Shown piece by piece: positions 1-44,740 of a stretch of 64,000 nucleotides of DNA. Position 1 is the stretch's first letter, and each line of letters starts with the position of its first letter. The notes under the pieces were generated by a model. That model was not told where the DNA came from. It searched no databases and saw nothing but the letters and a program-made list of their open reading frames with translations. Position numbers and translations under genes: made by a program. The DNA comes from Laetmonice hystrix (Eukaryota). The stretch covers positions 21,452,001-21,516,000 of the forward strand of contig OZ249442.1 in assembly GCA_965235115.1 (NCBI GenBank), read 5' to 3'.

Positions 1-3000
1 ACCGAAGTTGATCCCAACCAGTCAGTCCAGTGCCTTTGACAGTGGCAGTGGCCACCCCCGTCGTCCAAACGATGTCTCCAAAAGCAAAACCTTTATTGGC
101 TTCGACCAGGCGATGAAGTGGGTTGTTCAAGTGGGTTAAATTCCCCGCAAAGAAGTTCCAGCCGCAAAGCCATCGAGCTCGGAGAAAAACAAGAGTTGTT
201 GTTGTTGCTTCGTTGACGTCGAGCAGCCCACGTCATCGACACGCCCAGTTCTTCGCCAAGATCTGCGGCCAGTTAACTCGGCCTACATGTTTACAAATTC
301 ATCTCAGACCAGATGTCAATCATGTTTGTTAGATCATGGCCTTGTAACCTGTCGTATACATGAAAAACGGACAAGTCAGCCTGTGGCCAAATAGTCCGGG
401 CGTAGGCACTTCCCTTCCATAACGCTATGGACTGGACCTGATTACACCCGAGCGATAAATTTGTTCTTGCCCGTGACGTCACGACCATTCCCCGACATGA
501 GCCATGTTTTGGTAGTACATGGCTCGTTTCTGGCTTGGGACAGGGGGGGTATCCACGTTCGCAGCGCCATCTAGGTCGAGCGATAATAGAGAACCAAAAC
601 AATGCGGCCGAGACGACTCAAAGTAAAATCGAGTGCTTTGACAAAAATGCTGTCTATACGTTAAAACGTAATCAATTTGCCAAATTCGAGTTAGAGTCGC
701 TTACACAGTAGTATCTTCTTTCTAATTATATCAGATTTGTGAGCTTTTGTGCTCTAAAAATATATATTTAACCAATTCATCGGACGTCGTCCGCCATTCT
801 GCCATGACTGATAAATTGCTAAAAAATGGTTAACTTTAGACGCTGACCATACGTTAACTGGACGAGCGTTAAAAAATCAGTTACCACCGTTGGAAAGCTT
901 ATCATTTTTTGTATCTAATTCTTCAACCCCGCTCGCAAGCGCTCCAAGATTTCTGTGTCATTAGAGCACTTTTGGGTAGTCTGTCTTTGCCACTGGTATC
1001 GGAGAGACGGCCAGGGATGTCCGGCTAGTCCTCGCGTCGAGTCGCGGAAAGCACCCGGGCTCGAGTCGCTGTCAGTGTCAGCCGACAATCAACTCGTAAA
1101 TTTTCATACACTGCGCCAGGAATCGTTATCAAACTTACCACCCACAAAGGCTCAAATATGTTCTAAAGCTATAGGAGCATGTTTTTTAATACCTCAGACT
1201 GGTAAAATTGTTAAAAAACGAGTGAAGGCTAGATCCTGTCCGACGCGTGAACATGGCTGCAGGGCGCACGGGGGTCCCGGCTCACGCTCAGCTCGAGTCC
1301 CGCTTGGTACTGGCGCGCTCGGTCTCTGCGACCGCTATTATGTTTGGTCGTATAGAGGGCGCTGCGAACGTGGACACCCCCCCTGGGCTTGGGAGGTGTG
1401 CTCGTGGGGTACGACGAAACACCGAAACCGAGAGAATTTACCGAAAACGACCGAAGTCGACCTTGGCATATCGACACCGACATCCAGATGGCAATAAGGT
1501 CGTCAGTTTCGGTCGGTTTTGGTGTTTAGTCGGACCGGTGCTCCCGGGCAGGAATGTCCTCAAGCTGGGGTAAAATGCGATCGTATTTTTCAACGTCCAA
1601 ACAAGTTTGCTCGTCCAATTTTACAAGTGAATCGACACATAATATTATGAGAAAGGTCGTTGTATTATGATAAATTTCTGTGCAGACAGGACAGGCTATC
1701 TCTAGAAATTGCGATGCAATACTTTCTCTTTAACGAAACCGTGACGAGTTTTAATGACAGTTTCGAAGTTGACTACAGGTGAGGAGCTGAGCGTCCACCA
1801 GTCACGACCGCGCCCTGGGAATTCCGACTGTGTACCGTTGTGAACGTGGGCGGTGGAGGCAGTGGAGGTGGCCAGCAATGCGCGTGAGGGAAACAAGTGG
1901 GCAAACCTCATCAAAAGGCGACTCCCGAGCCCACATGTGACCACAACCCACGCAAGGTGTCATGGCAGGTAACCGAATAAAACCAAAATGGACATTTCAC
2001 CTTAATGATGCAGTATAATGATGTTCAGGTATCATGGAGTATTTTTGTATCCTTACTGTCAACAGCTCCATGGCGCAAGGTTTGGTCCTCAGTTAAAGAA
2101 GTGCGGTAAACTGCAGTAACCGGCGAAAGTTAACCTGCAGACATAAATTATATTCCATGAAGCACCAGGGGTTATAATCCTAGTATTGCCATCGCTGGAA
2201 AAACGGTTATTACCTCGTCGCTGGCCTTGTGATATTCTTAACAAAGTCCAATCCTAAGTAAGGGAACCCCACCAAACAAATAAAGTACTGCGGTTTCTGT
2301 CTGCCGTAGGCCTAAGTAGGTTAACGACCTCTTCTGTTACTTCTGTTACTCAGGGTGTGAAACCGATCTGCAAAGTGGCCCAGTTCACCCTGAGGGTGGA
2401 TCAATGATAGCTGCAGACAGGGAAACTTGGCATAAGTCACGGACTTTTACAAGACTCACGTCTGAGAATGGCTGCAACTACAGTCACACTATCGAATACA
2501 GGAATTCGAAATGAGTTGTTGTGTATAATGTATGAATCCATAGTCGTCAAGGCGAGATGATATGTGATGCTCGCAAACATACCGGCTTTACGAAATGTAA
2601 ATGTGGTTTAAGGTTGCTTTCATGCTCTTCAATTATTGAATGCCTTACGGTGTTTGAGATGAAATGAAAGCCTTCTACTTCAATACGTTTGTGGCAGAGA
2701 TACCAAAAATGGGTAACGTGCGGTTCAAATCAAATATAGGCCTACCTTTAATAAGAGAGAGCATCTGTCCCTGCGTCCTCTAGCGAATCCATATACGCCC
2801 ACGCAAGATAATGTAGAAACGTTTCGATCGGAGAACAAACCAAGTAAAGAAGTTCAAACATTTGATTGGTCATATCATGTGAGAAAAGTTTACATGTCAC
2901 GTCAGTGTTACGGTTGCTATTTCCGGGTAAATCATAATCTTGGTTAAATGAAATTCAACATTCCAGTTGCCTGTTGTTGCTATGAAGCGATCGTCTTATG

Positions 3001-3395
3001 GCGGGTTGTGTGCAAAATTGGTTTATGTAAATTGGGACATCTAAAAGTAACAAAATCAAGCTTAATTTGGATAGAGGCATCAGCACCCTATGTAAGGCAT
3101 ACCAACACTTTGCTGAGTCAAAAGTTGCCATATTATGCCAACTTATTCAACCACGTCGATCACCGCTCATGTCTCTTCAATCCAGACCGTCTTTACATCA
3201 CCATTTTTAACAAGTTTGAAATTGTCGCTGACTCTACGTCATCGATCACGTGATAGGGATTCCTTTCTCGGTTGGTAATACACAAAGTGGGGCATCACCC
3301 GATGAATTTCATTGGCTGCTCAAGTCAATGCCATGTCAACTATTTTGTCCACCACCAGCCATAAGACGAGCGTTCACAACGACAAGAGGCGACTG

Positions 3396-3520
3396 AAATG
3401 TTGAATTTCATGGGATTTCTCTATTTCTGCAGGTATACATTTAATGACTTATAGTCTAAGGCATTATCTAACCTAACAGCAAAATCTGAATTTTGGAGTC
3501 ATTGAAATAAGAGATATTCA
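3396..3520. repeat. Dispersed repeat fragment, second copy at 59288-59400
   Basis: Both loci share tgttgaatttcat..gatttctc.atttctg..ggta.acattta.tga.ttat..agtctaag and ttttggagtcatt.aaa..agagat in the same order and orientation. Confidence 0.7.
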
Positions 3521-4122
3521 TGGTTTACTGAATGCTATTGCTATTTTAATGTTGTATTTGCTCACTTCGACCTCCCATATATTTTTAAACCCCCACTTTA
3601 GCCGTGTCTCTGAGGGTTGGAAGCCTTCCGTATGTAGACAAGACTGACAGAGTCAATATTCATAAAATAATTAATTGGTTTCTGCCCTCCAGCCTTTATC
3701 TCATTGTAAGGCGTGAGAAACTGACAGCCCTCTGGCCCAGGGGGTAGCACAAGTCAGGCAGCTTGTACACGTGAGTAAACTAGATCTGGTGAAAATACAA
3801 TCTCTCAACAGTTGCATCATAATTAAAGTGTCACGTGCATCTGCCTGGCCTAGGCACGCACTTCTGCTATTTGTACAAATCTGATTTGGATTGGAGACCT
3901 TCTCCCAAGTGTACCAACTGTCACGTTTTCGGTCTGCCTGGAGACAATTGCATAACGTCCTCATGTCATGGTCATGTCCTCTCTCTCTATAGGACGAACC
4001 CCGGTTGGCCTGCCATGCCATTATACAACGGACATTACATTAGGCGCAAAGGAACAAATTAATAATATAATAATATGTAACAAAGTTACGTAAGTTAATT
4101 AAGTTACGTACCTGAACATTGA

Positions 4123-4192
4123 GATGTAGTAATGATCAGCTAATGATGAAACACTCAGTCATAGGAGGAAATGACCGTAATAGCTCTCTCTC
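4123..4192. repeat. Dispersed repeat fragment, second copy at 63350-63443
   Basis: Shared gatgtagta.tgatca...aatgatgaaacac..agtcatagga, then aatgaccgtaa, then agctctctctc. Confidence 0.75.
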
Positions 4193-6769
4193 GTACGGTA
4201 TCAGAGCCGATCTCTGATAGGGTAAATGATAACTTATATCTTAGCCCCTCCCCAATAACCTGGCCAAACACACTGCCCATATTTGATTTGACGGATTCAA
4301 ATGACAAGTCAAACTGCAAATCAGCAAGGCGCTACCAGTACTGCATTATGCCATAATAATCTATCCAAATCTAGCAGTAAATAGAACTTTACCTTTCAGG
4401 GGAAAAACGAGAAAATAAAATAATACAATATATAATACAGTGAGGACGCGATTTCGCATTGCAATCACGTTGGCTATCCCTGTTTGCATTCAGTGTACCT
4501 GACTTCTAACGTATTTTATTATATCATCGCAGGAGCTACTGAGAACTCCCGAGGAGCTGATAACTGTGTAATTTCCCGAGAGATCAGGAAACAGGGCCGT
4601 GGTGTGTAGGCGAAACCATCAACTAAAAGACGCGACACTTGAAGCAGGATCCTCGTATCAGGTGCAGAACTCATAACACAGGATGATTACACGTTGATTG
4701 GTCCGAGTTAATTCAGTTCTCCTTAAGTTAGAAGAAAACAGGCAGTGCAGAATTTGATTGATCTGGTTTCAATATTGATTCACACTTTCAGTTCAATGAA
4801 GAAGAGCCCGGTCGAAAGAAAAAAATGGCGGGACACTGCAAGGGTTTTAAGATTTAAGTCCTTGATTTCTCAAGTGTAACGCTATCCTGAAAAGCTACGC
4901 CTTGCCGCTGGCAGTTTACGTTGTCCTCCAGAAAACCTAGTGACTCTAGTTCTTCTCTGTATATTGCTGAAAACATCTCAACTGTCGTAATCTCCTTTAC
5001 TCTGCGTTATACGGTATCTTATCGCGATTCCTATGGGTTGTTGCTACTGGATTTATCATTGAACAACGTTTATCCGCCTGCTCGGTACCAAAGCAACAAG
5101 AACATGAATAACCTATCACAGACGAGGAGAGCAAGGTTCCAGTCTACATAGTCATCAAACAAACATGAACCTCAACTTGGAGGCTCCATAACTACATCTG
5201 AAGTATACTGCTGCATGTGGTAGTAACAATGGTACCGAAAGGATTAACCACTCAATTATCCTGTCAATGGGCCTATAGTTCACGGTACAGTCAAATGTTC
5301 TAAATGGTGTCGCTTACATTATAACACCCCCTCTCCCACCCCGCCCACACATCAGCAGTACACGTCACACGTCATTAATGTTCACGGGCACCCGCCGCCC
5401 CGGGCACGCATAACGAAAAGTTGGATTCGTTATATTCTGGATCTGTCGTTAATGAGATGAAAATGCAGCGACCATTTCAACATGGATGTCACTGGCTGCT
5501 GTCTCGGTACCCCCCCCCCCCCCCAAAAAAAAAAAAATCTCGATCTTTCAACACATTATTCATACTATCCCGACACAAGTACGCAATCTTCGTCACGGGC
5601 ACAGAATGCTGTCTGTTCTTTGTTTTCACATAACCAATGCCTGTCATGAAATATGCAATGGTGTCTTGGCATTGAGCGCCGCTGCACGTTTTCAGTCAGG
5701 CAAGGTGCTTCTAGTAAAGTGGTTTGGCGTGTTGGAACTTTCTTCAAGCCTGGGCTACCTTCAACAATAGCGACCAGGGCTTGCATTATTAAGCTTCCGT
5801 TGTTTCTTGAACATTGGCAAAGTCTATGTCCAACTGGAGCGAAGCATCGATCGCCTGCACTCTTTACAATGCAGCAACGATAAATCTCTGCTAAAATTCA
5901 TTCGCATTTTTCATGTCGAGGCACTCATACAATCATGTGAATTTGCGAAATTTCATAAACATAATACAAAAAGTCTGCTACAATGGCAAACTATTGAGGT
6001 TTCATTTGATCCGTATGTTTCGATTTGAGGTTTGGAAGTGGTATCTTAGCGATACGTTTTCTGACCAGTCAATCGTTTGGGGAACTATTGCAATAGGCAG
6101 ACGTGGCCTCGTAAACGCAGCAGCAGGCAATACCGCGCAGATGCTGAAGACGTCTCGGAATAACAAACGACATTTTCAGTGCGTAACATTCTTCCAAACA
6201 TGTTCTTGTCAATCAAATACCTTAGCTGTCCAATCGCCGCTCCTTATTCCACTCTACCGAGAAAAGGGGGCGTGGTCGACGACGCATCACTAGGCACGCT
6301 CCAGCGCTGACGACTGCCGGACAACTGGCACGGAATCCTGGAGGTTCTATGAATATCCAGTACCCGCTGCTGATATAGTAGGGCGGTGAGCTGCTACGTT
6401 TAAGAGGCGGTCGTGGAAGTGGTCTATCACTACAGGTGGCAAACCTCTGGCCACACGCACGGACAGGCGGATCCCACCAAGGTTTATATACCAACCGGGT
6501 ACCACGCGAGCCAGGCACCGGAACCTCCGCCCCCAATAGACGTTTACTTGTTACAGTCAAAAGTATACTGCTGGCCCAGCTTTTCATACTGTGTCATCCA
6601 TGTACGAGGAAACGCGTCAATAGAAAACTCCTACAAGGTATTGTTGACAGCCTGGTGGAAGAAAAGTTGTTGAGGTGGTGCCAAAGAAAGGTACCACATG
6701 AGTTAAAAGTAACTAAACACGCACGAAGGTGTGTTCAAAGTAGACGTACACGGGCTTGCTGCAGTACGT

Positions 6770-6809
6770 AAGTTAACATTTTTTTTAGAATTCCAAAACA
6801 TCTCTACAG
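6770..6809 (+). promoter_or_regulatory. Probable 3' splice acceptor(s) of a 5'-UTR intron of the neuropeptide gene
   Basis: ttttttttAG (AG 6787-6788) and tctctacAG (AG 6808-6809) lie just upstream of ATG 6812. The upstream in-frame extension from GTG 6731 is intron-like. Confidence 0.5.
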
Positions 6810-6811
6810 GA

Positions 6812-6886
6812 ATGACAATGGAAAAACTACCAATATATATTGCTTTAGGGTTACTCGTCCTGTGTGTCTCTACAATAGTAGAAGCC
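6812..6886 (+). other. Signal peptide coding region (about 25 aa)
   Basis: Basic residue, hydrophobic core IYIALGLLVLCV, then V-E-A fitting the (-3,-1) small-residue rule before SDG. Confidence 0.8.
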
Positions 6887-8347
6887 AGCGATGGTGTTTA
6901 CGACAAACGATATGGCCACCCATCCTACAATGACTTTGTGGTTGGCAAAAGACAAAAAGAAGCGTATATGGACTTTCTGCTTGGCAAACGAGGTGGTCAT
7001 ATGGAAGGTTCCTACTTGCCGCACTACATGGACTTTCTCCTTGGAAGTAAACGAAACATGAAGCCGAACTACGCCGACTTTCTGGTTGGCAAGCGAAGCC
7101 ACATGGCCCCCTCGTACGAGGAATTCCTCCTCGGGAAACGTGCCGAGAACAGTCCCTCCTATGCCGACTTTGTCGTAGGCAAAAGAGCACGCCCCTCGTA
7201 TGACGATTTCGTCCTCGGCAAGCGTCTCACCCCTGAGGACTACGATGATGTCATCCTTGGCAAGCGAAGTAAGCGAGACGCGGAGGGCGTAGAATGGGGC
7301 GTGGAAAAAAAGTATACCCCAGACCATTCTAGCTTCGTTCTTGGAAAGAAAGCAGATCAAGACTATTCAAAGTTTGTTCTAGGAAAGAAAAGTAATCCCG
7401 AGTATTCCAGCTTTGTACTCGGTAAGAAGAACAACCCTAACTATGAAAACTTTGTCCTGGGGAAACGAAATGACCAAGAGTATTCCAATTTTGTTTTAGG
7501 AAAGAAAAATCTGCCTGATTATGAGAGTTTTGTGCTTGGAAAGAAGGACGGAAAGCAGAAGAACCGTATGGAGTACGGTGACTTCGTCATGGGAAAGAAG
7601 AACGCCCAGGATTACGCCAAATTTATAATGGGAAAGAAAACAAGCCCAGACTATTCAAAATTTATAATGGGCAAAAAGGACAACCCAGACTATTCACAGT
7701 TTTTCATGGGAAAGAAGCAAAATCAGGATTACTCACATTTTGTACTTGGCAAGAAAAACACGCCAGAATACTCAAACTTTCTAATGGGGAAAAAGAACCA
7801 CCCAGACTATGAAAGCTTTGTTTTGGGGAAGAAGAACCAGCCAGACTATGAAAGCTTTGTTTTGGGGAAGAAGAACCAGCCAGACTATGAAAGCTTTGTT
7901 TTGGGGAAGAAGAACCAGCCAGACTATGACAGCTTTGTTTTGGGGAAGAAGAACCACCCAGACTATGACAGCTTTGTTTTGGGGAAGAAGAACCACCCAG
8001 ACTATGAAAGATTTGTTTTGGGGAAGAAGAACCATCCAGACTATGAAAGTTTTGTTTTGGGGAAGAAGAACGCTCCCGACCACCAAGCGTTCATCATGGG
8101 TAAGAAAAACATCCCTGACTACGAGAGATTTGTCCTCGGCAAAAGAAATAACGACTATGCACACTTTGTGCTCGGGGACAAGAGAACCAATATGCCGGCA
8201 TTCAACGACTTTTTACTGGGGCAGAAGCGTGCACAACCAGACCACCCGGAATTCGTACTTGGGAAGAAAAACAATGAGGACTATTCCAGCTTTGTTCTGG
8301 GGAAACGTACGCAAGGGGACACGGCAGTTACAAACAATGGTAGGTAG
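6812..8347 (+). CDS. Multi-copy amidated neuropeptide precursor, 511 aa, 33 YxxF(V/L/I)(L/M/V)G peptides; FVMamide/FxL-amide-like
   Basis: Single ORF from ATG 6812 to TAG 8345-8347. Hydrophobic N-terminus (MTMEKLPIYIALGLLVLCVSTIVEA) is followed by repeated peptides ending G-KR or G-KK (amide donor plus convertase site), e.g. ARPSYDDFVLG-KR, TSPDYSKFIMG-KK, NHPDYESFVLG-KK. Confidence 0.95.
   Translation: MTMEKLPIYIALGLLVLCVSTIVEASDGVYDKRYGHPSYNDFVVGKRQKEAYMDFLLGKRGGHMEGSYLPHYMDFLLGSKRNMKPNYADFLVGKRSHMAPSYEEFLLGKRAENSPSYADFVVGKRARPSYDDFVLGKRLTPEDYDDVILGKRSKRDAEGVEWGVEKKYTPDHSSFVLGKKADQDYSKFVLGKKSNPEYSSFVLGKKNNPNYENFVLGKRNDQEYSNFVLGKKNLPDYESFVLGKKDGKQKNRMEYGDFVMGKKNAQDYAKFIMGKKTSPDYSKFIMGKKDNPDYSQFFMGKKQNQDYSHFVLGKKNTPEYSNFLMGKKNHPDYESFVLGKKNQPDYESFVLGKKNQPDYESFVLGKKNQPDYDSFVLGKKNHPDYDSFVLGKKNHPDYERFVLGKKNHPDYESFVLGKKNAPDHQAFIMGKKNIPDYERFVLGKRNNDYAHFVLGDKRTNMPAFNDFLLGQKRAQPDHPEFVLGKKNNEDYSSFVLGKRTQGDTAVTNNGR
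7796..8068 (+). repeat. Coding tandem repeat, 7 x 39 bp (N[HQ]PDY[ED][SR]FVLGKK)
   Basis: Unit aaccacccagactatgaaagctttgttttggggaagaag starts at 7796, 7835, 7874, 7913, 7952, 7991 and 8030. Confidence 0.95.
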
Positions 8348-8669
8348 CTATGACTGACGTCTTGTTTACGTATGCATATGTTTGTACTTCCCAGGGTGAG
8401 CGTCTATTTGTATTGTTTTAACGGTCCATGAATAAGAAGCAGCCTCCGAGCGAGGAAAAACTATACCGCGGTGAACCGACAAGCTTACGGTGGGCGCTCA
8501 ACTAAAAATTAACCCTGGCCACCATACGTAATCAATTTATTTACCGCCTATTTACATGAAAACCTGGATCTACAATAACTATACGCCACCTTCCATTCAG
8601 CAAGATACCTTACCAGTCTGCAACTATTAAAGGTCAAGCTAAAATTCACCACAAGCCTGTCCTGAAGCT

Positions 8670-8679
8670 AATAAATAAA
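8670..8679 (+). terminator. Candidate polyadenylation signals (overlapping AATAAA) for the neuropeptide gene
   Basis: aataaataaa about 320 nt after the stop, followed by GT/T-rich sequence. Motif only. Confidence 0.35.
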
Positions 8680-10770
8680 AAGAAAAGTCTAACGTGTTGT
8701 CTTCTTGTCACTGAAGACAATGTCACATAGATTTGGTCTGAAAAATAACTCGTATAACTCAGAAAAAAAATCATCTTACTCAAGTTGAGTTCGCTAATGT
8801 AAACAAACTGCTGAAGCACCGGTCTCTTGCGGTTGGGCGAGAATGCAAACATTGACAGCGCCCGGGAAGGCTCCATTTTGTTTTGTTTATTTTTCTCAAT
8901 AATGCAGAGACTCTGAGACCAACTACGTGTGGCATCGTGTCAACGAACATAAGGGCAACAGGTTAGACAGTTGTATTTTGGATTGTATTCCGGACAGGCT
9001 TATATATCTTAGCTCGACCTTTAAGGCTATCGACTAACCACTTCCAAAAAATCAGTCCCGAAATAAGCAGCTTCGAAAGGGGAAAAAATCCAAAATAACA
9101 ATGTTGCAAAATTGGCTTCCTAATCAGCACCATTTTTTCAAAGTAATTTCCATGCAGTATATTTTCTGCAGATATAACTTTAACCACCAAAAACATGATA
9201 ACACCAACTTAAAGCTGCTTCCGATAGTAGATAGAATGGTCAGGGCATGGATTTTTTTCCATGTTTCTACCACTAAATGCGCTCCGTATTTTGACTTTGC
9301 CCGGCAGTTGGAAACTGCAGCAGCACCTACCGACATCTCCGGCCCTTTATGTTGGAAGATGACCCTCTGACCTTCCTGAATGAAGGACACGGACTTGCCC
9401 AGACATATATCAAATAGGAGCCCTCGCTCGGTCCACTTTCTCAAATCGATTGCTAACTATTGGCTGCGGTATGCAATCTGTCGCTGTCCCGTTCGTACGT
9501 GTCGCCTTTCAATTACGGCTAGGATTTACAATATGGCGAGGCGCTCTTAAGTGGTTTATTCATTCTAAGGTTAAACCCGGTCTGCTTTGGTGTGATTATC
9601 TACACCGCGTTATTAAAGCCACATCTTATCAGCATCATTAGATAGTGGCTACTCCTCAAGCTGAGTTTTCCCTCCCTGTCACAGGTTGGAGGGTCGGCAT
9701 ACGGCATACTTGTAAAATACGAGGTTTTGAACGAAAGGTGGGATATAGAGGGCGTTGACGGTGATCGGTTAGTCTGGTGTGGAGGCGGAGAAAGGCATGC
9801 GAAAATGAAAGTCATAAAGAAATTGATTTCGAACGACTCCCTTTCCCTTGAACACTCTTCCGATTCCGTCTCTGACACATTCAATGGCAAAGACGGGCTC
9901 TAGAAGTTATCCCGTAAGAAGGACAGTTATTTGATGTTTTGCGCCTTGCGCACTTCAGCCTAAGACAAAACGGTAATATAACATGTTCTATTCACTTTTA
10001 TTACCCCAACATTAAGAAATGGCAACTCTGTGTATTTTCTGTTCACTGGGGCCGGGAAGAAGCTCGCATGCAGTCAGGTAGTTAACGCGTCTTACCCCAC
10101 ACAACCAGGAGAACCGCCTCACAAAATGTTCTTCTCCTCTTTGGCCCAGATTAACTTAGAGCTATAAGCACTGGAACGTGAAGAAACTCTAACAACTCTC
10201 CACAAGGCCTACGTGAAATGTTTGTCGTCTGCAGGTAGGTAAGCACGTACTGCGATAACGTCATTATTGCGAGGAACGCACTAGGATGGGAGAGACAAAG
10301 TTATACTCTTTGACACTCTAACGTTGTTAGGAATTCTGGCTGTGAGTAGCATGACGAATGTGTGCATTGTTTCAAGCTATGGTTCGTAATTACTGCGTGA
10401 CTTCCAGAGAGATAATTCCTTTTATGTCGTTGTTCAGACAGCTGCATATAGCGTCTCACCGAATGGATGGATTGACAGTATTCCTACATTATCCTGCAAT
10501 TTTAATGATCTACTAGACGTGAACCGAGGTGAATATTTCTTAAAACGTAATATCTCCACAATGCAAATTTAAGTCATGAGTTTAATTAATTTAGTTACGT
10601 ATGTGTCATGCAGTCAGTAAGCATCTCATCTGTCTTAGCATAACAGTCTATAGTAAGCGCTTCAAAGTCCTGCGACGGCTCAGGGTGAATTATGAACCTA
10701 TTTAGAAGTTTGTATCTATTAAGGATGTTACATCTTTTATCAACTTTCATGACGCCCCTTGGCATCATAA

Positions 10771-10916
10771 TGTACATATGCCGCAGTGCTGTCAGCTCTT
10801 GGGTCTGAGATGAGGAAATAATAAGCGATAATTACATATGCCGCAGTGCTGTGTACATATGCCGCAGTGCTGTCAGCTCTTGGGTCTGAGATGAGGAAAT
10901 AATAAGCGATAATTAC
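10771..10916. repeat. Local duplication: two 65-bp copies with a 16-bp partial copy between them
   Basis: tgtacatatgccgcagtgctg...gcgataattac at 10771-10835 and 10852-10916; the intervening atatgccgcagtgctg is a partial third copy. Confidence 0.9.
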
Positions 10917-11167
10917 TGCCAGGCATTCAAGACGCCGAAAATGAGAACCACTTTCTGCTGCTGGGAATGGTTAAAGCAATTACGCGTTTGGTCGTTCCTC
11001 GCTGATAACAAAAGGAACCCCCTTTTTTATTTGGAGGTATGCCAGCAGGGCAAATGGGAACACTTGGGGTGTATCCGACACTAAGTCAATGACCTGGAAA
11101 TACGAAAGAAAGAATGAAGAGAAGGAGTGGGCGATAGGGGACCGGTACATGGGTCTCTTTAAATGTC

Positions 11168-11531
11168 TTCAGCCCCTGTGACCGACTGTTATCACACAGT
11201 GCGTGCCACCTGTCGCCGACGGTGAATCATATAGTGTAATTTGTAGCCGATGCTCAGCCCCTGTGACTGATTTTCAGCCCCTGTGACCGACTGTTACCAC
11301 ACAGTGCGTGCCACCTGTCGCCGATGCTCAGCCCCTGTGACTGATTTTCAGCCCCTGTGACCGACTGTTACCACACAGTGCGTGCCACCTGTCGCCGATG
11401 CTCAGCCCCTGTGACTGATTTTCAGCCCCTGTGACCAGCTGTTACCACACAGTGCGTGCCACCTGTCGCCGACGGTGAATCGTACCGTAATTTGAGGCCG
11501 ATGCTCAGCCCCTGTGCCTGATTTTCAGCCC
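11168..11531. repeat. Minisatellite with two 74-bp inner units and two longer (102-105 bp) outer units
   Basis: ttcagcccctgtgacc starts at 11168, 11273, 11347, 11421 and (partial) 11523. Confidence 0.9.
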
Positions 11532-11855
11532 GAGGTCAGTGACCGATGTCGGGACCGCTTGCCTCTGCCCTTCCCCCTATCCCTCAGGATCTTGCAACAT
11601 TTAACACTAAAAGGTTTAAATGAAAGAAATCCCAATGGATCCCCATGCTGTAGTAGTAGTACCCCCACCCCCGTCCCCCTTTTCAACAACACGTACCTAC
11701 CCGTCTCCAGTCCAGCGACAACTACGCCAATCGACAGAAAAAAAATACGGCCCCGACAACACGACATGGCACAAAGCTGAAGGCCAACCGTATTGACCAC
11801 CCCAGTACAATCAACACTGAGGTCAACGGCGCCTTGAGCCCGTTGCTTCAAGCTT

Positions 11856-12746
11856 GCTTCCACAAGTAGTATATGGAATGTGGCGTATGACACAGGCATC
11901 CACAAGTAGTACCTATATGTGGAATGTGGCGTATGACACAGGCATCCACAAGTAGTATATGGAATGTGGCGTATGACACAGGCTTCGACAAGTAGTATAT
12001 GGAATGTGGCGTATGACACAGGCTTCCAAAAGTAGTAGGCTATATGGAATGTGGCGTATGACACAGGAATCCACAAGTAGTATATCGAATGTGGCGTATG
12101 ACACAGGCATCCACAAGTAGTATATGGAATGTGGCGTATGACACAGGCATCGACAAGTAGTATATGGAATGTGGCGTATGACACAGGCATCGACAAGTAG
12201 TATATGGAATGTGGCGTATGACACAGGCATCGACAAGTAGTATGGAATGTGGCGTATGACACAGGCATCCACAAGTAGTATATGGAATGTGGCGTATGAC
12301 ACAGACATCCACAAGTAGTATATGGAATGTGGCGTATGACACAGGCTTTGACAAGTAGTATATGGAATGTGGCGTATGACACAGGCTTCCAAAAGTAGTA
12401 GGCTATATGGAATGTGGCGTATGACACAGGAATCCACAAGTAGTATATGGAATGTGGCGTATGACACAGGCATCCACAAGTAGTATATGGAATGTGGCGT
12501 ATGACACAGGCATCGACAAGTAGTATATGGAATGTGGCGTATGACACAGGCATCGACAAGTAGTATATGGAATGTGGCGTATGACACAGGCATCGACAAG
12601 TAGTATATGGAATGTGGCGTATGACACAGGCATCCACCAGTAGTATATGGAATGTGGCGTATGGCACAGGCATCCACAAGTAGTATATGGAATGTGGCGT
12701 ATGACACAGGCTTCCACAAGTAGTATATATGGCCTATGACACAGGC
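11856..12746. repeat. 40-bp minisatellite, about 22 copies, with a ~363-bp higher-order repeat
   Basis: Unit acaagtagtatatggaatgtggcgtatgacacaggcatcc. The variant ggcttccaaaagtagtaggctata recurs at 12021 and 12384. Confidence 0.95.
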
Positions 12747-14344
12747 GACGTTATTGCCAAGTTTTAGAAATGGTCTGTCACGAATCAACAATTCCTACAG
12801 TGCTTCACTTGTAAAAACTATATAATATGCTACTATAGTATGTACCTTAAACAAGCATACATAATAAATATACAAGGGCCATATAAGGTAAATCATACCA
12901 CTGCTACCTAAAAGTTGATGTTGTAAAATGTAATTTCCTGATTTGGGGTGACAGGTTCCAACGTAAATTAAATTTGATGTCTCTAGAGTTTGGTAGCAGA
13001 TGGCACAATTTAATTTCTAGTTTGTACAAGGATTTTTGCATAGTTTTGATCTCCCATGCCGGATTTCCCGATTCGTCTAAATACATTGTTGTTCCCGCCA
13101 TGTTGTACCCTTGAGAAGGCAAGCCGTGCATGTCATTGCCCTTGTGTACCTGTTCCTGGGTAATGTTGAACAATAACAAAACGGAAGGTAATTATGAATT
13201 TATCAACTTCGTTGCATGCAAACGTTGGGTTAAATTCTCATTCTCAATAAAATGCCAACCCGCGTGTATAAAAAAAATAACACGCACTTGGAAGCCGAAA
13301 ACCGCACTTCAAAGAAATCAAATTACTGGCACCGTATGATGCCAAACGGTTACACCGCAGTTTTATGGATATAAGCAGACAACCTGACTGCGACTGGTAT
13401 CCAAGCGGGGCATGCTTACATACAAACTAACATGAAAGTTGCATGTTCATGCAATCTCAGCCAATACCAGAATATTCAATAGTTTCCTTTGGTATAAGAT
13501 ATTTTCCGGAGGGGCTGATGTCGTAGTTTGGGACTTTGGTTCCGCACAAATGCTGATTGCATGACAAGCAAAAAAAGAACAAAAGAAAGAACCCGACCCA
13601 TCGTTTACCGCATATTTGATAGAAAACTACGGCAACACACTGCATATGCGTCCCTACAGTACTGAATTTGGTTAAATGTCCAACATCGAAAAAACTTTGA
13701 GGTGATATAGGCCAATGCAGTTTAACCCGCCTGACCATACACGGTCCATGTACAAAGGGACGTGTCCGTCTTTGTATTTTCCTACACGACAAGAGACACT
13801 GAAAAATAAGTTACGCATGATGTATCGAAACATATTACTTTTTATCGTAACTTGACAAGGAATATCATCCTCTAAGAATTCAGATGGTGGAACTCTCACG
13901 GTCTGTTTGAATGGGGCATTTCGTATGACACCAACCGTCTGTTCCCAATATGTTTATAATTACTCTCCGCCTTGACCTTTATGCAGGACCGAGAGGCTCA
14001 TCATGTCTTAAATAATGTTGTTCTCAGATCTGCGGGAATCTCTTGGAATCACGTATGCTACATGTCTCTTGGAATCACTGATACTGCCCTTGGGGTGTGA
14101 AACGGCAGTGACGAAGTGATAGTTATGAGCCCCTCGTGTTGAATAATTCATCTTGTCCTAATGCACCGTACCTTTGTGTCGTGAACCGGAAGTAAATGAG
14201 ATACATGCGTGACCTTTGACAGCAAGGATCGCGCGTCTTCTTGTTTGTTGACTCCCTGAACTGAATTATCGGGTTACTTCAGTTAAAGAGGCCAGTAGTG
14301 CATCCAATCAGAAGTTGCCATTTGAGCTCGCAGTAGTGTATCAA

Positions 14345-15644
14345 GGCCCGGCCACACAGGACGCGTATTCGTCACGTCACGTCACGACACGATGTTTCCG
14401 CTTGTCTGAGACGCATCCAGTGTGGCCAGCACAATTCATTCACATGGTGACCGACAAATTCTCGAGTGTGACCGGAGACGCATCCAGTGTGGCCAGCACA
14501 ATTCATTCACATGGTGACCGACAAATTCTCGAGTGTGACCGGAGACGCATCCAGTGTGGCCAGCACAATTCATTCACATGGTGACCGACAAATTCTCGAG
14601 TGTGACCGGAGACGCATCCAGTGTGGCCAGCCCCGTTCATTCACATGGTGACCGACAAATTCTCGAGTGTGACCGGAGACGCATCCAGTGTGGCCAGCCC
14701 CGTTCATTCACATGGTGACCGACAAATTCTCGAGTGTGACCGGAGACGCATCCAGTGTGGCCAGCCCAGTTCATTCACATGGTGACCGACAAATTCTCGA
14801 GTGTGACCGGAGACGCATCCAGTGTGGCCAGCACAATTCATTCACATGGTGACCGACAAATTCTCGAGTGTGACCGGAGACGCATCCAGTGTGGCCAGCA
14901 CAGTTCATTCACATGGTGACCGACAAATTCTCGAGTGTGACCGGAGACGCATCCAGTGTGGCCAGCCCAGTTCATTCACATGGTGACCGACAAATTCTCG
15001 AGTGTGACCGGAGACGCATCCAGTGTGGCCAGCCCCGTTCATTCACATGGTGACCGACAAATTCTCGAGTGTGACCGGAGACGCATCCAGTGTGGCCAGC
15101 TCCGTTCATTCACATGGTGACCGACAAATTCTCGAGTGTGATCGGAGACGCATCCAGTGTGGCCAGCCCCGTTCATTCACATGGTGACCGACAAATTTTC
15201 GAGTGTGACTGGAGACGCATCCAGTGTTGCCAGCCCAGTTCATTCACATGGTGACCGACAAATTCTCGAGTGTGACCGGAGACGCATCCAGTGGGTTCAT
15301 TCACATGGTGACCGACACATTCTCGAGTGTGACCGGAGACGCATCCAGTGTGGCCAGCCCAGTTCATTCACATGGTGACCGACAAATTCTCGAGTGTGAC
15401 CGGAGACGCATCCAGTGTGGCCAGCACAATTCATTCACATGGTGACCGACAAATTCTCGAGTGTGATCGGAGACGCATCCAGTGTGGCCAGCACAATTCA
15501 TTCACATGGTGACCGACAAATTCTCGAGTGTGACCGGAGACGCATCCAGTGTGGCCAGCCCCGTTCATTCACATTGTGACCGACAAATTCTCGAGTTGGA
15601 TAGGAGACGTGACGGGACGGATACGCATTCTGTGTGACCAGGCC
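14345..15644. mobile_element. Non-autonomous TIR element (MITE-like, possibly PIF/Harbinger) containing a 67-bp tandem array
   Basis: 39-bp inverted repeats at 14345-14383 and 15606-15644 (33/39 identical). Possible degenerate TCA/TTA target duplication if the termini are AGGCC/GGCCT. Confidence 0.75.
14408..15596. repeat. 67-bp minisatellite, about 18 copies
   Basis: Unit gagacgcatccagtgtggccagcacaattcattcacatggtgaccgacaaattctcgagtgtgaccg; one copy near 15294 is about 11 bp shorter. Confidence 0.95.
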
Positions 15645-15789
15645 TTTACAGTGTGGCTAAATGACATTGTTTCTGCCTATAGTATAGGCCTACAGGGCCG
15701 AGCAATTTACGGGCAAGTGGCAATTAAAGGCAGGGTAAACACCCACGGCAAATAAGGTTTCGTAGACCAAATGAAACACCAGCATTTAC

Positions 15790-16093
15790 CTCAGGGCAAT
15801 AAATGCCACAATTACGTTGTCTGAATGAAGTAATTAACGTGTAACCGCCCGATGTATGACGCCGCTGGTTCTTACCTTGACCTGCTTGTGTGTTCATCAG
15901 AGCCGAATTCTGCACACCGCGGCGTATTGCGTGTTACTCTGCTCACAGACCTTGTCTACACGATGTTTGGAACAACGTTTGTAAACGTCCGAGGTGATGA
16001 ACACACAAGCAGATCCAGCAGCGTCACACATCGGGCAGTTACACGTTAATTACTTCATTCAGACAACGTAATTGTGTCATTTATTGCCCTGAG
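15790..16093. mobile_element. Foldback/MITE-like element, 304 bp
   Basis: 79-bp inverted arms at 15790-15868 and 16015-16093 (75/79), plus a perfect inner 18-bp pair at 15882-15899 and 15995-16012. No TSD identified. Confidence 0.75.
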
Positions 16094-41535: not shown

Positions 41536-41726
41536 ACACATGTTGACTGGCCTTTTTCGGGCAACGGCATAAGTCTGTTCCCCCCTCGGGCCATGTTGAT
41601 CACCCCAAAATCAATCTATTTCCCTCGGGCGATGCCCTCGGGAAATAGATTGATTTTGGGGTGATCAACATGTCCCTCGGGGGGAACAGACGTATGCTGT
41701 TGCCCTCTTGACCAGTCAATATGTGT
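41536..41726. mobile_element. ~190-bp foldback hairpin with four CCCTCGGG motifs
   Basis: 66-bp arms at 41559-41624 and 41640-41705 (5 mismatches) around a 15-nt loop; outer pair cacatgttgactggcc / gaccagtcaatatgtg. Confidence 0.75.
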
Positions 41727-41733
41727 ATACTGG

Positions 41734-42077
41734 TAACTTCACTGCAGATTGGAGGCGCACCGCGCAGTGAACAACCTCAACTGTTACCTTTACTACAGAT
41801 TGGAGGTGCACCGCGCGGTGAACAACCTCAATTGTTAACTTCACTACAGATTGGAGGCGCACCGCGCGGTGAACAACCTCAACTGTTAACTTCACTACAG
41901 ATTGGAGGCGCACCGCGCGGTGAACAACCTCAACTGTTAACTTCACTGCAGATTGGAGGCGCACCGCGCAGTGAACAACCTCAACTGTTACCTTTACTAC
42001 AGATTGGAGGCGCACCGCGCGGTGAACAACCTCAATTGTTAACTTCACTACAGATTGGAGGCGCACCGCGCGGTGAA
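41734..42077. repeat. 51-bp palindromic minisatellite, array 2 (about 6.6 copies, 204-bp higher-order period)
   Basis: Same unit and orientation as array 1. The ctgcag/gcgcagtg variant is at 41741 and 41945; the caattg variant is at 41792 and 41996. Confidence 0.95.
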
Positions 42078-42738
42078 TCAAAATGTTCGGAAGCCATTTT
42101 CTCCTTGAAATCGGCAATTTCTTAAAACCTGCCAAAAACTTAGTATTCAGAGCAGGGGGAGTCCAAGACCCGATACTCCCTACAGAGGGTACGCCGAAAG
42201 ACATTCCCACTTGTAGGGCCACTTGAGCTAAATGAGATGCCTCAGCTTGAAGATCGGGGGCCAGCCTTACCCCCTTACCTCCCACCAATTAGTATAATAT
42301 AGGCAGCTGACGGCATTTCTGTTACCGACATGGCACAAGGAGTGGAAAAAAAACCCTCTACAAATCGACCCCTCCTCATGACGAGTAGTTTTTGAAATAA
42401 GTTGCCTTGTCTTCAAAGTTTCTAAGCGATTTTCCACTTTCTTGGATCAAACACGCGCTGAATATCTCCGACTGGCAAGCAAAGTTTGAACAAATTCACT
42501 CAAACAAAAGAGAGCCTTCGGTTGCACGTGTCAGCATTCAGATGTCGTCTGCGCTTCTCTTTCTCGTCGTAAAACTTATGTTTGGAAGCCGCTGTCTACA
42601 GACAATAGTGTATTCCAATGTATTTGATTCCCTCTTAGCCCTCTTAGATCTAGCCAGACTATGATATCGCTTTAATATTTCACGTTTATAATATTTGACT
42701 CGGTAGAGACGAAGGTTAATGACTTATAGCATATCAGA

Positions 42739-43137: not shown

Positions 43138-43780
43138 CATGAATACGGCACTCCACCTTCAGTGCTGTGCCGTATTCATGTGCCAGGCATACCCATTGTT
43201 TAGGGTATAGTGGATTGTTGAACTGTCTTGGCTCCGAGTGACCCGCAGTTTGAGTATGAAGAGACCTTCAGTGTCGTGCCGTATGTGCCAGACATACCCA
43301 TTGTTTAGGGTATAGTTGATTGGTGAACTGTCTTGGCTCCGAGTAACCCGCAGTTTGAGTATGAACAGACCTTCAGTGTCGTGCCGTATGTGCCAGACAT
43401 ACCCATTGTTTAGGGTATAGTGGATTGTTGAACTGTCTTGGCTCCGAGTAACCCGCAGTTTGAGTATGAAGAGACCCTCAGTGTCGTGCCGTATGTGCCA
43501 GACATACCCATTGTTTAGGGTATAGTTGATTGTTGAACTGTCTTGGCTCCGGGTGACCCGCAGTTTGAGTATGAAGAGACCTTCAGTGTCGTGCCGTATC
43601 CATGTGCCAGACAAACCCATTGTTTAGGGTATAGTTGATTGGTGAACTGCCTTGGCTCCGAGTGACCCGCAGTTTGAGTATAAAGAGACCTTCAGTGTCG
43701 CGCCGTATGTGCCAGGCATACCCATTATTTAGGGTATAGTTGATTGTTGAACTGTTTTGGCTCCGAGTGACCCGCAGTTT
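43138..43780. repeat. 105-bp minisatellite (about 6 copies) preceded by a 14-bp perfect hairpin
   Basis: gtgccag starts at 43180, 43285, 43390, 43495, 43604 and 43709; stem catgaatacggcac / gtgccgtattcatg at 43138-43180. Confidence 0.93.
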
Positions 43781-44296
43781 GGATCTGAAGATGTCGGAGA
43801 GTACGAAGAAAGTCACGGATAGAACAGAACTTAAACTCCCAGACCCAGAGCCTTTGTCACACCGTAGAATTACCTTGAAATGGTCTGGTACGATGTGCCA
43901 GCTTTCTCCGACGTGTCGTACGGAATACAGGAAGACACCGTGCTATACTTAATTACATAGGCAAATAAATGCAGGAAAGGCTGGAGCGCCAAATAAAAAA
44001 AAAATCGCTCCAGCCGGCTCCCGTGATGTCACGCATGTTGAATGGACGCACTTGTTCCAGTAAAACCATCTTTGTCAACATCTTCAAAGGGGGAGCATTT
44101 CGTGAGAAACGTTTAAAAGCAAACCAATATTTCTCTAACCATCTTTCACTCCGATTAAATATTTCATCACATAAAATTTACAAAGAGGAGTCATTTTTTG
44201 TTGGAAATAACTTCGTGAAGGCCTTTTAGGAACCCATAGCATTTTGGGGACTTTCTCTCCTAATAGTTTTATGTGGATCCCTTGTAACCCCTTCTG

Positions 44297-44740
44297 AACA
44301 CACCCACCCACACCTACAGCGAAGTACATGACAAAAACACCCACACACACCTACAGCGAAGTACATGACAAACAAACACAAACACACCCCCATCCTACGG
44401 CGAAGTACATGACAAACACACCCACCCCCACACCTACAGCGAAGTACATGACAAACAAACACAAACACACCCCACCTACGGCGAAGTACATGACAAACAC
44501 ACCCACCCCTACACCTACAGCGAAGTACATGACAAACAAACACAAACACACATACACCTACGGCGAAGTACATGACAAACACACCCTCATATACACCTAC
44601 AGCGAAGTACATGACAAACAAACACACCAACACATACACCTACAGCGAAGTACATGACAAACACACCCACACATACACCTACAGCGAAGCACATGGCAAA
44701 CAAACACACCCACAACTACAGCGAAGTACATGACAAACAA
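44297..44740. repeat. AC-rich minisatellite, 11 copies of the core cctac(a/g)gcgaagtacatgacaaac
   Basis: Conserved core separated by variable-length AC-rich spacers, partly in alternating dimers. Confidence 0.9.

What the first reader, a model, noticed from the sequence alone, without database searches (positions are those of the whole stretch)
6812..8347. 33-peptide YxxFVL/FIM-amide neuropeptide precursor, probably an uncharacterised member of its family
Seen: a signal peptide plus 33 related peptides, 30 ending G-KR/KK. Most have Tyr (some His) three residues before Phe, and the C-termini are FVL, FLL, FVV, FIM, FVM, FFM, FLV or FLM (one copy VIL). Knowledge (recalled, not searched): the DYSKF(V/I)(L/M)G copies resemble the annelid FVMamide family of Platynereis, and crinoid SALMFamide precursors also carry FxL/FxM-amides. 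Inference: a highly expanded, FVL-dominated precursor whose receptor may be unknown.
Basis: partly seen in the sequence, partly recalled or inferred. Interest (0 to 1): 0.8.

Follow-up and report, generated by a model that had tools for sequence, protein, structure and literature searches.

The report
Annelid FVMamide-family neuropeptide precursor gene
This is a real, intact gene of an annelid worm that encodes a precursor cut into about 33 small "YxxFVL/FIM-amide" signalling peptides; it is an unannotated new member of the FVMamide neuropeptide family already described in Platynereis, so it is sound but not a new kind of thing.

Summary
Window 6812-8347(+) is one uninterrupted 511-codon ORF: a signal peptide followed by 33 copies of x-P-D/S-Y-x-x-F-[V/L/I]-[L/M/V]-G. 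Thirty copies are followed directly by KK/KR and three by x-KR.

The gene belongs to the annelid FVMamide precursor family:
- The best homologue is a Paralvinella palmiformis hypothetical protein (E 1.7e-142, 47% identity).
- Urechis unicinctus 'FILamide' also matches (BLASTP 5e-34).
- The published Platynereis FVMamide precursor has the same three-part plan: KR-flanked PSYxDF copies, an acidic spacer, KK-flanked DYSxFVx copies, then KR-flanked copies again.

In Platynereis the amidated peptides were seen by mass spectrometry. They are reported to raise ciliary beat frequency in larvae.

High copy number and FVL-amide copies already occur in Platynereis, so neither is new. The gene is single-copy in this 627-Mb genome. 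Codon patterns indicate purifying selection on the peptide core.

No RNA run was found, so expression and processing in this species are inferred. I found no receptor for the family in the literature I searched.

Verdict: new member of a known kind, modest interest. One side result: Urechis 'FILamide', published as species-specific, belongs to this family. The scan had not noted this gene before on other DNA.

The parts
6773..6809 (+). Sequence resembling a 3' splice site, just upstream of the start codon. It has TTAAC (branch-point-like) at 6773-6777, a T-run at 6779-6786, an AG at 6787-6788 and a second AG at 6808-6809. This suggests a non-coding 5' exon further upstream.
   Evidence: Read directly from the sequence. 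Inference only; no RNA support.
6812..8347 (+). Complete coding sequence of the precursor: 511 codons plus a TAG stop, in a single exon.
   Evidence: Homology to Paralvinella P0001, which is also a single ORF in its contig.
6812..6886 (+). Signal peptide, residues 1-25, with the predicted cut after V-E-A.
   Evidence: Hydrophobic core and the -3/-1 rule. No SignalP run was available.
6887..7267 (+). N-terminal block, residues 26-152. It holds a short propeptide (SDGVYD) and 8 divergent copies of the type xPSYxDF[V/L][V/L]G, all flanked by KR. Copy 3 ends G-S-KR and is predicted to stay Gly-extended and not amidated.
   Evidence: The Platynereis N-terminal block has the same plan, and its GS-extended peptide DRPSYIDFLM-GS was detected by mass spectrometry.
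7268..7312 (+). Acidic spacer SKR-DAEGVEWGVE-KK, residues 153-167.
   Evidence: Platynereis has an acidic spacer at the equivalent place.
7313..8107 (+). Central block, residues 168-432. It holds 20 copies, mostly decapeptides of the type N-x-P-D-Y-x-S-F-V-L-G, and 19 of the 20 are flanked by KK.
7751..8071 (+). Recently amplified sub-array inside the central block: 39-nt period, 8.2 copies, 91% matches. It encodes the N[H/Q]PDY[E/D]SFVLGKK copies.
   Evidence: Tandem Repeats Finder. Short-read contigs break up at this place (table 8).
8108..8308 (+). C-terminal block, residues 433-499, with 5 copies. Four are flanked by KR. Two are predicted to stay Gly-extended (G-D-KR and G-Q-KR).
8309..8347 (+). 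C-terminal tail TQGDTAVTNNGR and the TAG stop codon.
8670..8679 (+). Two overlapping AATAAA polyadenylation-signal hexamers about 325 nt after the stop codon. This is the probable 3' end of the transcript.
   Evidence: Read from the sequence. Inference only.

Best explanation
The ORF is the FVMamide-family proneuropeptide gene of this annelid, and the most likely direct counterpart (ortholog) of the Platynereis gene.

Likely mechanism (inferred from the sequence and from general knowledge of prohormone processing, not tested here):
1. The signal peptide takes the 511-residue precursor into the secretory pathway of peptidergic neurons.
2. Prohormone convertases cut after the KK/KR pairs, and a carboxypeptidase removes the basic residues.
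3. Peptidylglycine alpha-amidating monooxygenase turns each exposed C-terminal Gly into an amide.

Predicted products are 30 amidated peptides, of which 28 are distinct and 24 are decapeptides (for example NQPDYESFVL-NH2, NHPDYESFVL-NH2, TSPDYSKFIM-NH2). There are also three Gly-extended, non-amidated peptides and an acidic spacer peptide.

By analogy with Platynereis FVMamide and Urechis FILamide, the peptides are probably released by a few larval brain or apical-organ neurons and raise ciliary beat frequency. The receptor is unidentified and is presumably a GPCR.

Shown here: the ORF, the repeats, the homology and the sequence constraint. Inferred: expression, processing, amidation, the ciliary role and the receptor type.
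For: - Intact ORF with a signal peptide and 33 regularly spaced units.
- Homology: Paralvinella palmiformis hypothetical protein, E 1.7e-142 with 47% identity and 5e-143 in the representative search. Urechis unicinctus FILamide QUP52035.1, E 7e-27 and BLASTP 5e-34.
- The Platynereis FVMamide precursor (PMC3890597 supplements) has the same unit: DYSKFVMGKK there, against DYSKFVLGKK and DYSKFIMGKK here; RPSYSDFVLGKR there, against RPSYDDFVLGKR here. It also has the same order of KR block, acidic spacer, KK block and KR block.
- Amidated FVM peptides, and a Gly-Ser-extended peptide from a G-S-KR site, were found by mass spectrometry in Platynereis.
- Constraint at the peptide level: Gly is invariant in 33 of 33 units but is written with all four codons, Phe in 32 of 33 with both codons, and Leu with at least five different codons.
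- Seven single-base differences between the reference and the laid DNA contigs fall in the coding sequence; they are possibly heterozygous sites. Four are synonymous and hit core G, F, K and F residues. Three change residues outside the core.
- Single copy in the genome. Every one of the other genomic matches that I inspected is a minisatellite.
- Exons of the copper monooxygenase family that includes the amidating enzyme are present in the genome.
- Protein-language-model neighbours are all multi-copy amidated neuropeptide precursors.
- Reported functions in relatives: FVMamide raises ciliary beat frequency and reduces arrests. FVMamide is expressed in 3-day Platynereis larvae. FILamide is expressed in four apical-organ cells.
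Against: - No RNA run holding the gene was found, so transcription is not shown here. The only hint is a 249-nt contig in the small run X4 that lies on 8081-8327 and nowhere else in the unique part of the 5,951-nt stretch laid. That run's type is unknown.
- No peptide data exist for this species.
- The Platynereis sequence could not be aligned computationally, because it was available only as paper text. That comparison is by inspection.
- No shared neighbouring genes with the Paralvinella locus were detectable within 10 kb on either side, so one-to-one orthology rests on similarity and single-copy status.
That it is an annelid is inferred from the best hits and from earlier scan notes.
Confidence: 0.9

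Rival explanations
1. The gene is a silent or decaying copy. The open frame is kept by recent tandem amplification and not by function.
For: No RNA evidence was found. Part of the array (7751-8071) is a young 39-nt tandem repeat with 91% matches, and a young repeat would stay open for a while without selection.
Against: The older copies have diverged widely at synonymous sites while keeping Y, F, G and the KK/KR pairs. The 511-codon frame has no stop or frameshift. Differences between the reference and the read contigs spare the core. This is the only copy in the genome, so no other gene could supply the function.
Confidence: 0.04
2. The protein is a secreted repetitive protein with another role, such as a structural, adhesive or tube-cement protein or an antimicrobial-peptide polyprotein, and not a neuropeptide precursor.
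For: Signal peptide plus tandem repeats is a generic layout. Tube-building annelids make repetitive secreted proteins.
Against: Every unit ends in Gly plus a dibasic pair, which is the amidation and cleavage signature. The homologues in Platynereis and Urechis are expressed in neurons and apical-organ cells, and the Platynereis peptides were detected as amides. The nearest language-model clusters are all neuropeptide precursors.
Confidence: 0.03
3. The gene belongs to a different peptide family (echinoderm SALMFamide, mollusc enterin or PxFV-amide, or fulicin/FVamide), and its similarity to FVMamide is convergent.
For: All of these are short amidated peptides with an aromatic residue near a hydrophobic C-terminus.
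Against: Of the top 150 hits in a search of 1.84 billion representative proteins, the only ones that carry the motif and a name are from annelids; the rest are unnamed contigs. SALMFamides end in Phe-amide and enterins and FVamides end in Val-amide, whereas here one more residue (L or M) follows F-V. The three-part layout matches Platynereis FVMamide specifically.
Confidence: 0.02

Closest known systems
Platynereis dumerilii FVMamide proneuropeptide (Conzelmann et al. 2011 and 2013; GenBank JF811328; PMC3890597)
   Same: Both have a signal peptide and a tandem unit D-Y-S-x-F-V-x-G-KK. Both run in the order KR-flanked N-terminal xPSYxDFxxG copies, acidic spacer, long KK-flanked central array, KR-flanked C-terminal copies. 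Both have a G-S-KR site that gives a Gly-extended peptide. FVL-amide copies are present in both.
   Different: Here the last residue is mostly Leu (FVL in 18 of the 30 amidated peptides). The Platynereis central array is almost uniformly FVM. The residues before Tyr are N-x-P-D here and N-D-G-D or N-A-D-D in Platynereis. This gene has 33 copies; the two partial Platynereis transcripts carry at least 42 motif copies. The similarity was judged from the printed sequence, not computed.
Paralvinella palmiformis hypothetical protein LSH36_597g01021 (P0001, 732 aa)
   Same: It is the best database match (E 1.7e-142, 47% identity). Its coding sequence is also a single ORF. It has a long KK-flanked array of N-x-P-D-Y-E-x-F-x-x-G units, and it also has an M-E-Y-x-x-F copy.
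   Different: Its C-terminus is mostly FLM. It has a longer N-terminal region and longer spacers. It is annotated only as hypothetical.
Urechis unicinctus 'FILamide' precursor (QUP52035.1, GenBank MT162136; PMC7737342)
   Same: It shares the unit x-P-x-[Y/F]-x-[D/E]-F-[I/V/L]-L-G-KK (BLASTP 5e-34). It is expressed in four apical-organ cells of the competent larva.
   Different: It has only about 8 copies in 336 residues. Its authors classed it as Urechis-specific. My matches place it in the same family as this gene and FVMamide.
Echinoderm SALMFamide precursors
   Same: They are multi-copy amidated peptide precursors with aromatic and hydrophobic C-terminal motifs.
   Different: The defining motif S-x-[L/F]-x-F-amide ends in Phe. 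No sequence match was found. The link is a recalled resemblance, not a test.
Mollusc enterins, Mytilus inhibitory peptides and annelid FVamide (peptides ending in FV-amide; recalled from my own knowledge)
   Same: The enterin C-terminus ...Y-S-H-S-F-V-amide loosely resembles ...D-Y-S-K-F-V-M-amide. These precursors are also high in copy number.
   Different: Those peptides end at Val, with no further residue. No named mollusc protein carrying the motif was among the top 150 hits. Platynereis has a separate FVamide gene.

Membership tests
Annelid FVMamide proneuropeptide family | N-terminal signal peptide and no other globular domain | tested here: met
   The N-terminus has a hydrophobic core and a V-x-A cut site. 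The Pfam scan gave only repeat-driven matches in which no single stretch passed on its own. SignalP itself was not available.
Annelid FVMamide proneuropeptide family | Many tandem copies of [D/E/N/S]-Y-x-x-F-[V/I/L]-[M/L]-Gly, each followed by a dibasic cleavage site | tested here: met
   There are 33 units. Gly is present in 33 of 33, Phe in 32 of 33 and Tyr in 29 of 33. Thirty units have a direct KK/KR.
Annelid FVMamide proneuropeptide family | Three-part layout: KR-flanked divergent N-terminal copies, an acidic spacer, a KK-flanked central array, then KR-flanked C-terminal copies | tested here: met
   The order of cleavage sites along the protein was compared with the printed Platynereis precursor.
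Annelid FVMamide proneuropeptide family | Significant sequence similarity to recognised members | tested here: met
   Paralvinella matches at E 1.7e-142 and Urechis FILamide at E 7e-27 and BLASTP 5e-34. The Platynereis protein was not returned by any search, so that comparison is by inspection.
Annelid FVMamide proneuropeptide family | The host is an annelid (the family was reported as annelid-specific) | tested here: inconclusive
   The species is not disclosed. All named homologues are from annelids. Earlier scan notes on this genome also read it as an annelid. COX1 was located, but its stop-free pieces are too short for the protein search.
Annelid FVMamide proneuropeptide family | Expression in neurons and release of amidated peptides | not testable with these tools
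   No RNA run was found. There is only an ambiguous 249-nt contig in run X4. This needs RNA-seq, in situ hybridisation and LC-MS/MS.
Echinoderm SALMFamide family | C-terminal S-x-[L/F]-x-F-amide, with Phe as the last residue | tested here: not met
   All 33 units end in L, M or V, and Phe sits three residues from the end. None of the named motif-bearing hits is from an echinoderm.
FV-amide type peptides (mollusc enterin or Mytilus inhibitory peptide, annelid FVamide/fulicin) | The peptide ends in Phe-Val-amide | tested here: not met
   An extra L, M or V always follows before the Gly. Platynereis keeps FVamide as a separate gene.

The most novel reading that the evidence does not exclude
The FVMamide family may be wider and more variable than published. 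It would unite Platynereis FVMamide, Urechis 'FILamide', this FVL-dominated gene, and unnamed precursors from environmental contigs whose units end in F-I-A-Gly (P0005, about 20 copies) or F-V-T-Gly (P0015). The final residue would then drift freely between lineages, implying that a still unidentified receptor reads mainly the Y-x-x-F core. If some of those contigs come from non-annelid spiralians, the family would not be annelid-specific.
Probability: 0.25. Interest if true: 0.45.

Novelty: new member of a known kind. Interest (0 to 1): 0.3.

Why it matters
It adds a complete, single-exon genomic copy of an FVMamide-type precursor from another annelid. No identical protein appeared in the collections I searched.

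It shows how the family varies: the C-terminal residue shifts among M, L and I while the Y-x-x-F-x-x-Gly core and the three-part layout stay fixed.

It links the Urechis 'FILamide' gene, published as species-specific, to this family.

The family has a reported effect on larval ciliary swimming, but I found no reported receptor. The 28 distinct natural peptide variants listed here would be a ready ligand panel for receptor deorphanisation.

None of this changes current understanding. It is a useful annotation, not a discovery.

Tried and rejected
- RNA evidence: two run searches found only runs of one sample. Laying them showed even coverage of coding and non-coding DNA, so X1-X3 are genomic DNA. 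X4 is ambiguous.
- Paralogues: the whole-genome search gave 102 matches. Every one I inspected is a minisatellite with a 13-residue or similar period and no peptide motif, so I rejected them as paralogues.
- More peptide exons in the window: a six-frame motif scan found none outside the ORF. The GT just before the stop codon (8340) is therefore unlikely to be a used splice donor.
- Synteny with Paralvinella: tblastn of all ORFs from the 22-kb Paralvinella locus hit only the precursor itself.
- Pfam: only spurious repeat-driven matches in which no single stretch passed on its own (PhnH and others).
- Species identification: the COX1 gene was found, but under code 11 it is split by 12 TGA codons into pieces of 55 residues or fewer. 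That is too short for the length-filtered protein search, so I dropped it.
- A profile search with seven family members added no named member.
- The gene-dense look of the contig carrying P0015 comes from gene calls that read through stops under code 11. I did not pursue it.
- I did not type the Platynereis sequence into a tool, so there is no computed alignment to it.
- A literature search with 'anywhere' matching returned almost only unrelated papers.

Full report
**Observation**

Translating window 6812-8347 on the + strand gives 511 codons and a TAG stop, with no internal stop. It is the longest ORF in the 64-kb window. The next longest lies inside a minisatellite.

After a 25-residue N-terminus with a hydrophobic core and a V-E-A cut site, the protein is a string of 33 units that fit x-P-[D/S/E]-Y-x-x-F-[V/L/I]-[L/M/V]-G.

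| Feature | Count |
|---|---|
| Gly present | 33 of 33 |
| Phe present | 32 of 33 |
| Tyr three residues before the Phe position | 29 (His 3, Phe 1) |
| Gly followed directly by KK or KR | 30 |
| Gly followed by S-KR, D-KR or Q-KR | 3 |

The strict motif occurs 29 times, against at most once in 2000 shuffles of the same protein. A looser form has no hit in any of the six frames of the rest of the window.

**Independent check of the DNA**

Contigs of three runs from one sample cover 3000-8950 at even depth (41-57x) over coding and non-coding sequence alike. These are genomic DNA, possibly the very sample the assembly came from, and they reproduce the ORF.

They show seven single-base differences from the reference inside the coding sequence. 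Four are synonymous and fall on core Gly, Phe, Lys and Phe codons. Three change residues outside the core: A111V at a peptide N-terminus, W162S in the spacer and Y168N at the first residue of a peptide.

**Anatomy**

- Residues 1-25: signal peptide.
- Residues 26-152: a short propeptide and eight divergent copies, all followed by KR.
- Residues 153-167: the acidic spacer SKR-DAEGVEWGVE-KK.
- Residues 168-432: twenty copies, nineteen of them followed by KK and most of them decapeptides.
- Residues 433-499: five copies, four of them followed by KR.
- Residues 500-511: a 12-residue tail.

Cutting at dibasic sites and amidating at Gly predicts 30 amidated peptides, of which 28 are distinct and 24 are decapeptides. 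Their C-termini are FVL 18, FIM 3, FVV 2, FLL 2, and FLV, FVM, FFM, FLM and VIL once each. Three further peptides would stay Gly-extended.

At the DNA level, 7751-8071 is a young 39-nt tandem array with 91% matches. The other copies are much more diverged.

Upstream, TTAAC, a T-run and an AG (6773-6788), plus a second AG at 6808-6809, look like a 3' splice site, so a non-coding 5' exon is likely. Two overlapping AATAAA hexamers lie at 8670-8679. These two points are inferences without RNA support.

**Evidence of constraint**

The invariant Gly is written with all four codons (GGG 14, GGC 9, GGA 8, GGT 2). Phe uses TTT and TTC, Tyr uses TAT and TAC, and Leu at the last position uses at least five different codons.

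So the copies have diverged at silent sites while the peptide core was kept. A mere DNA repeat or a decaying gene would not show this. The pattern of differences between reference and reads agrees.

**What it is**

- The best match among 5.8 billion clustered proteins is a hypothetical protein of the annelid Paralvinella palmiformis (732 aa, E 1.7e-142, 47% identity). It is also encoded by a single ORF.
- A search of 1.84 billion cluster representatives, run without the word index of the first search, gave 177 hits at E <= 0.001. Only about ten of the 150 best listed carry the motif; those I read among the rest are unrelated lysine-rich or repetitive proteins.
- One motif-bearing hit is named: 'FILamide [Urechis unicinctus]', QUP52035.1 (BLASTP 5e-34).
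- The supplements of Conzelmann et al. 2013 (PMC3890597) print the Platynereis FVMamide precursor. It has a signal peptide, KR-flanked copies such as KPEYQDFVLGKR, RPSYIDFLMGSKR and RPSYSDFVLGKR, an acidic spacer, a long run of DYSKFVMGKK and DYSNFVMGKK, and finally NYQDFV[L/M]GK[R/K] copies.
- The window gene has the same order of blocks and near-identical units: RPSYDDFVLGKR, DYSKFVLGKK, DYSKFIMGKK.
- That paper classes FVMamide as an annelid-specific family. It lists amidated FVM peptides seen by mass spectrometry, and also the Gly-Ser-extended DRPSYIDFLM-GS, which corresponds to the G-S-KR site I see in copy 3.

I therefore file the gene as a member of this family. The comparison with Platynereis is by inspection, because that protein was not returned by any search and I did not type it in.

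**Copy number in the genome**

The window lies at C7:21,452,001-21,516,000 of a 627-Mb, 35-contig assembly. A whole-genome protein search found the gene once at 100% identity. The other 101 matches have low identity, and every one I inspected is a minisatellite without the peptide motif. The gene is single-copy.

**How it most likely works**

These steps are inferred from the sequence and from general knowledge of prohormone processing:

1. The precursor enters the secretory pathway.
2. Prohormone convertases cut at KK/KR, and a carboxypeptidase trims the basic residues.
3. The exposed Gly is converted to an amide.

Exons of the copper monooxygenase family that contains the amidating enzyme are present in the genome.

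For biological role I rely on relatives:

- Platynereis FVMamide increases ciliary beat frequency and reduces ciliary arrests, favouring upward swimming.
- It is detected by in situ hybridisation in 3-day larvae.
- Urechis FILamide rises before settlement and is expressed in four apical-organ cells.

None of the papers I read or searched names a receptor for the family. That search covers open-access text only.

**Expression in this species**

Expression is not shown. Two run searches found no RNA run. A fourth, small run of unknown type (X4, 58 million letters) has a single 249-nt contig at depth about 11 on 8081-8327 and nothing else in the unique part of the 5,951-nt stretch laid. That would be unexpected for thin genomic coverage and may be a transcript fragment. 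I treat it as a hint only.

**Comparison and novelty**

Neither high copy number nor FVL-amide peptides are new. The two partial Platynereis transcripts together hold 33 FVMG and 9 FVLG motifs, and Paralvinella has at least 27 units.

What differs between lineages is which last residue dominates: M in Platynereis, L-M in Paralvinella, I-L in Urechis, V-L here.

The SALMFamide and FV-amide families fail their defining C-terminal feature and gave no sequence match. A protein-language-model search returned only generic multi-copy neuropeptide precursors such as MIP, tachykinin, allatostatin, FLP and pro-TRH. This supports the class but not a particular family.

The gene is a new, unannotated member of a known kind.

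**Side results**

- Urechis 'FILamide' was published as Urechis-specific but clearly belongs to this family.
- Unnamed environmental contigs encode related precursors whose units end F-I-A-Gly (P0005, about 20 copies, E 3e-60) or F-V-T-Gly (P0015). Their organisms are unknown.
- If some of them are not annelids, the family is wider than reported. I give this about 25%.

**Earlier scan notes**

Two earlier notes on other parts of this genome also read it as an annelid and pointed to the same Platynereis peptide catalogue. They agree with my reading but are not independent evidence. The scan had not noted this gene before.

Noticed in passing
P0008 (QUP52035.1), compared with window 6812-8344: Urechis unicinctus 'FILamide' was published as a Urechis-specific neuropeptide precursor (PMC7737342). 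It matches this gene at BLASTP 5e-34 and has the same Y/F-x-x-F-[I/V/L]-L-G-KK unit, so it appears to be the Urechis member of the FVMamide family.
   Followed up: partly
P0005 (L018/L021 10001-11773) and P0015 (L019/L022 2104-2649): Unnamed environmental contigs encode related multi-copy precursors with a different last residue: HPSFDEFIA-G-KR about 20 times in P0005, and xFENFVT-G-KR in P0015. The organisms are unknown. The dense gene calls on the P0015 contig read through stops under code 11, so they are unreliable.
   Followed up: partly
window 3199-3596: A high-copy repeat. Summed contig depth reaches about 2,500-16,000 here, against about 41-57 in the flanking unique DNA, and many contigs end here with loose ends.
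   Followed up: no
window 4938: Contigs from two of the three DNA runs carry a 21-nt insertion after this place relative to the assembly. It is probably a heterozygous indel in non-coding DNA.
   Followed up: no
window 8081-8327 in run X4: A small run of unknown type (58 million letters) has one 249-nt contig at depth about 11 inside the coding sequence and nothing else in the unique part of the 5,951-nt stretch laid. It could be a transcript fragment, but the run type could not be established.
   Followed up: partly
window 11525-12791 (-), 41716-42288, 43159-43620, 44226-44639: Several minisatellites produce long spurious ORFs of up to 384 aa made of repeated units.
   Followed up: no
G000:C20:24018303-24020882, G000:C1:48926165-48933161 and other places (L003-L016): The genome is rich in minisatellites with periods near 39 nt. 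They score at E down to 1e-33 against the 13-residue-period precursor, which is a trap for paralogue searches.
   Followed up: yes
G000:C2:47947229-48068373: More than twenty matches to the copper type II monooxygenase N-terminal domain (PF01082) lie within about 120 kb. This suggests a tandem array of roughly a dozen genes of the family that includes the amidating enzyme and dopamine beta-hydroxylase.
   Followed up: no
G000:C35:4760-6100 (L017): The mitochondrial COX1 gene is on contig 35. It has 12 in-frame TGA codons, as expected for the invertebrate mitochondrial genetic code.
   Followed up: partly
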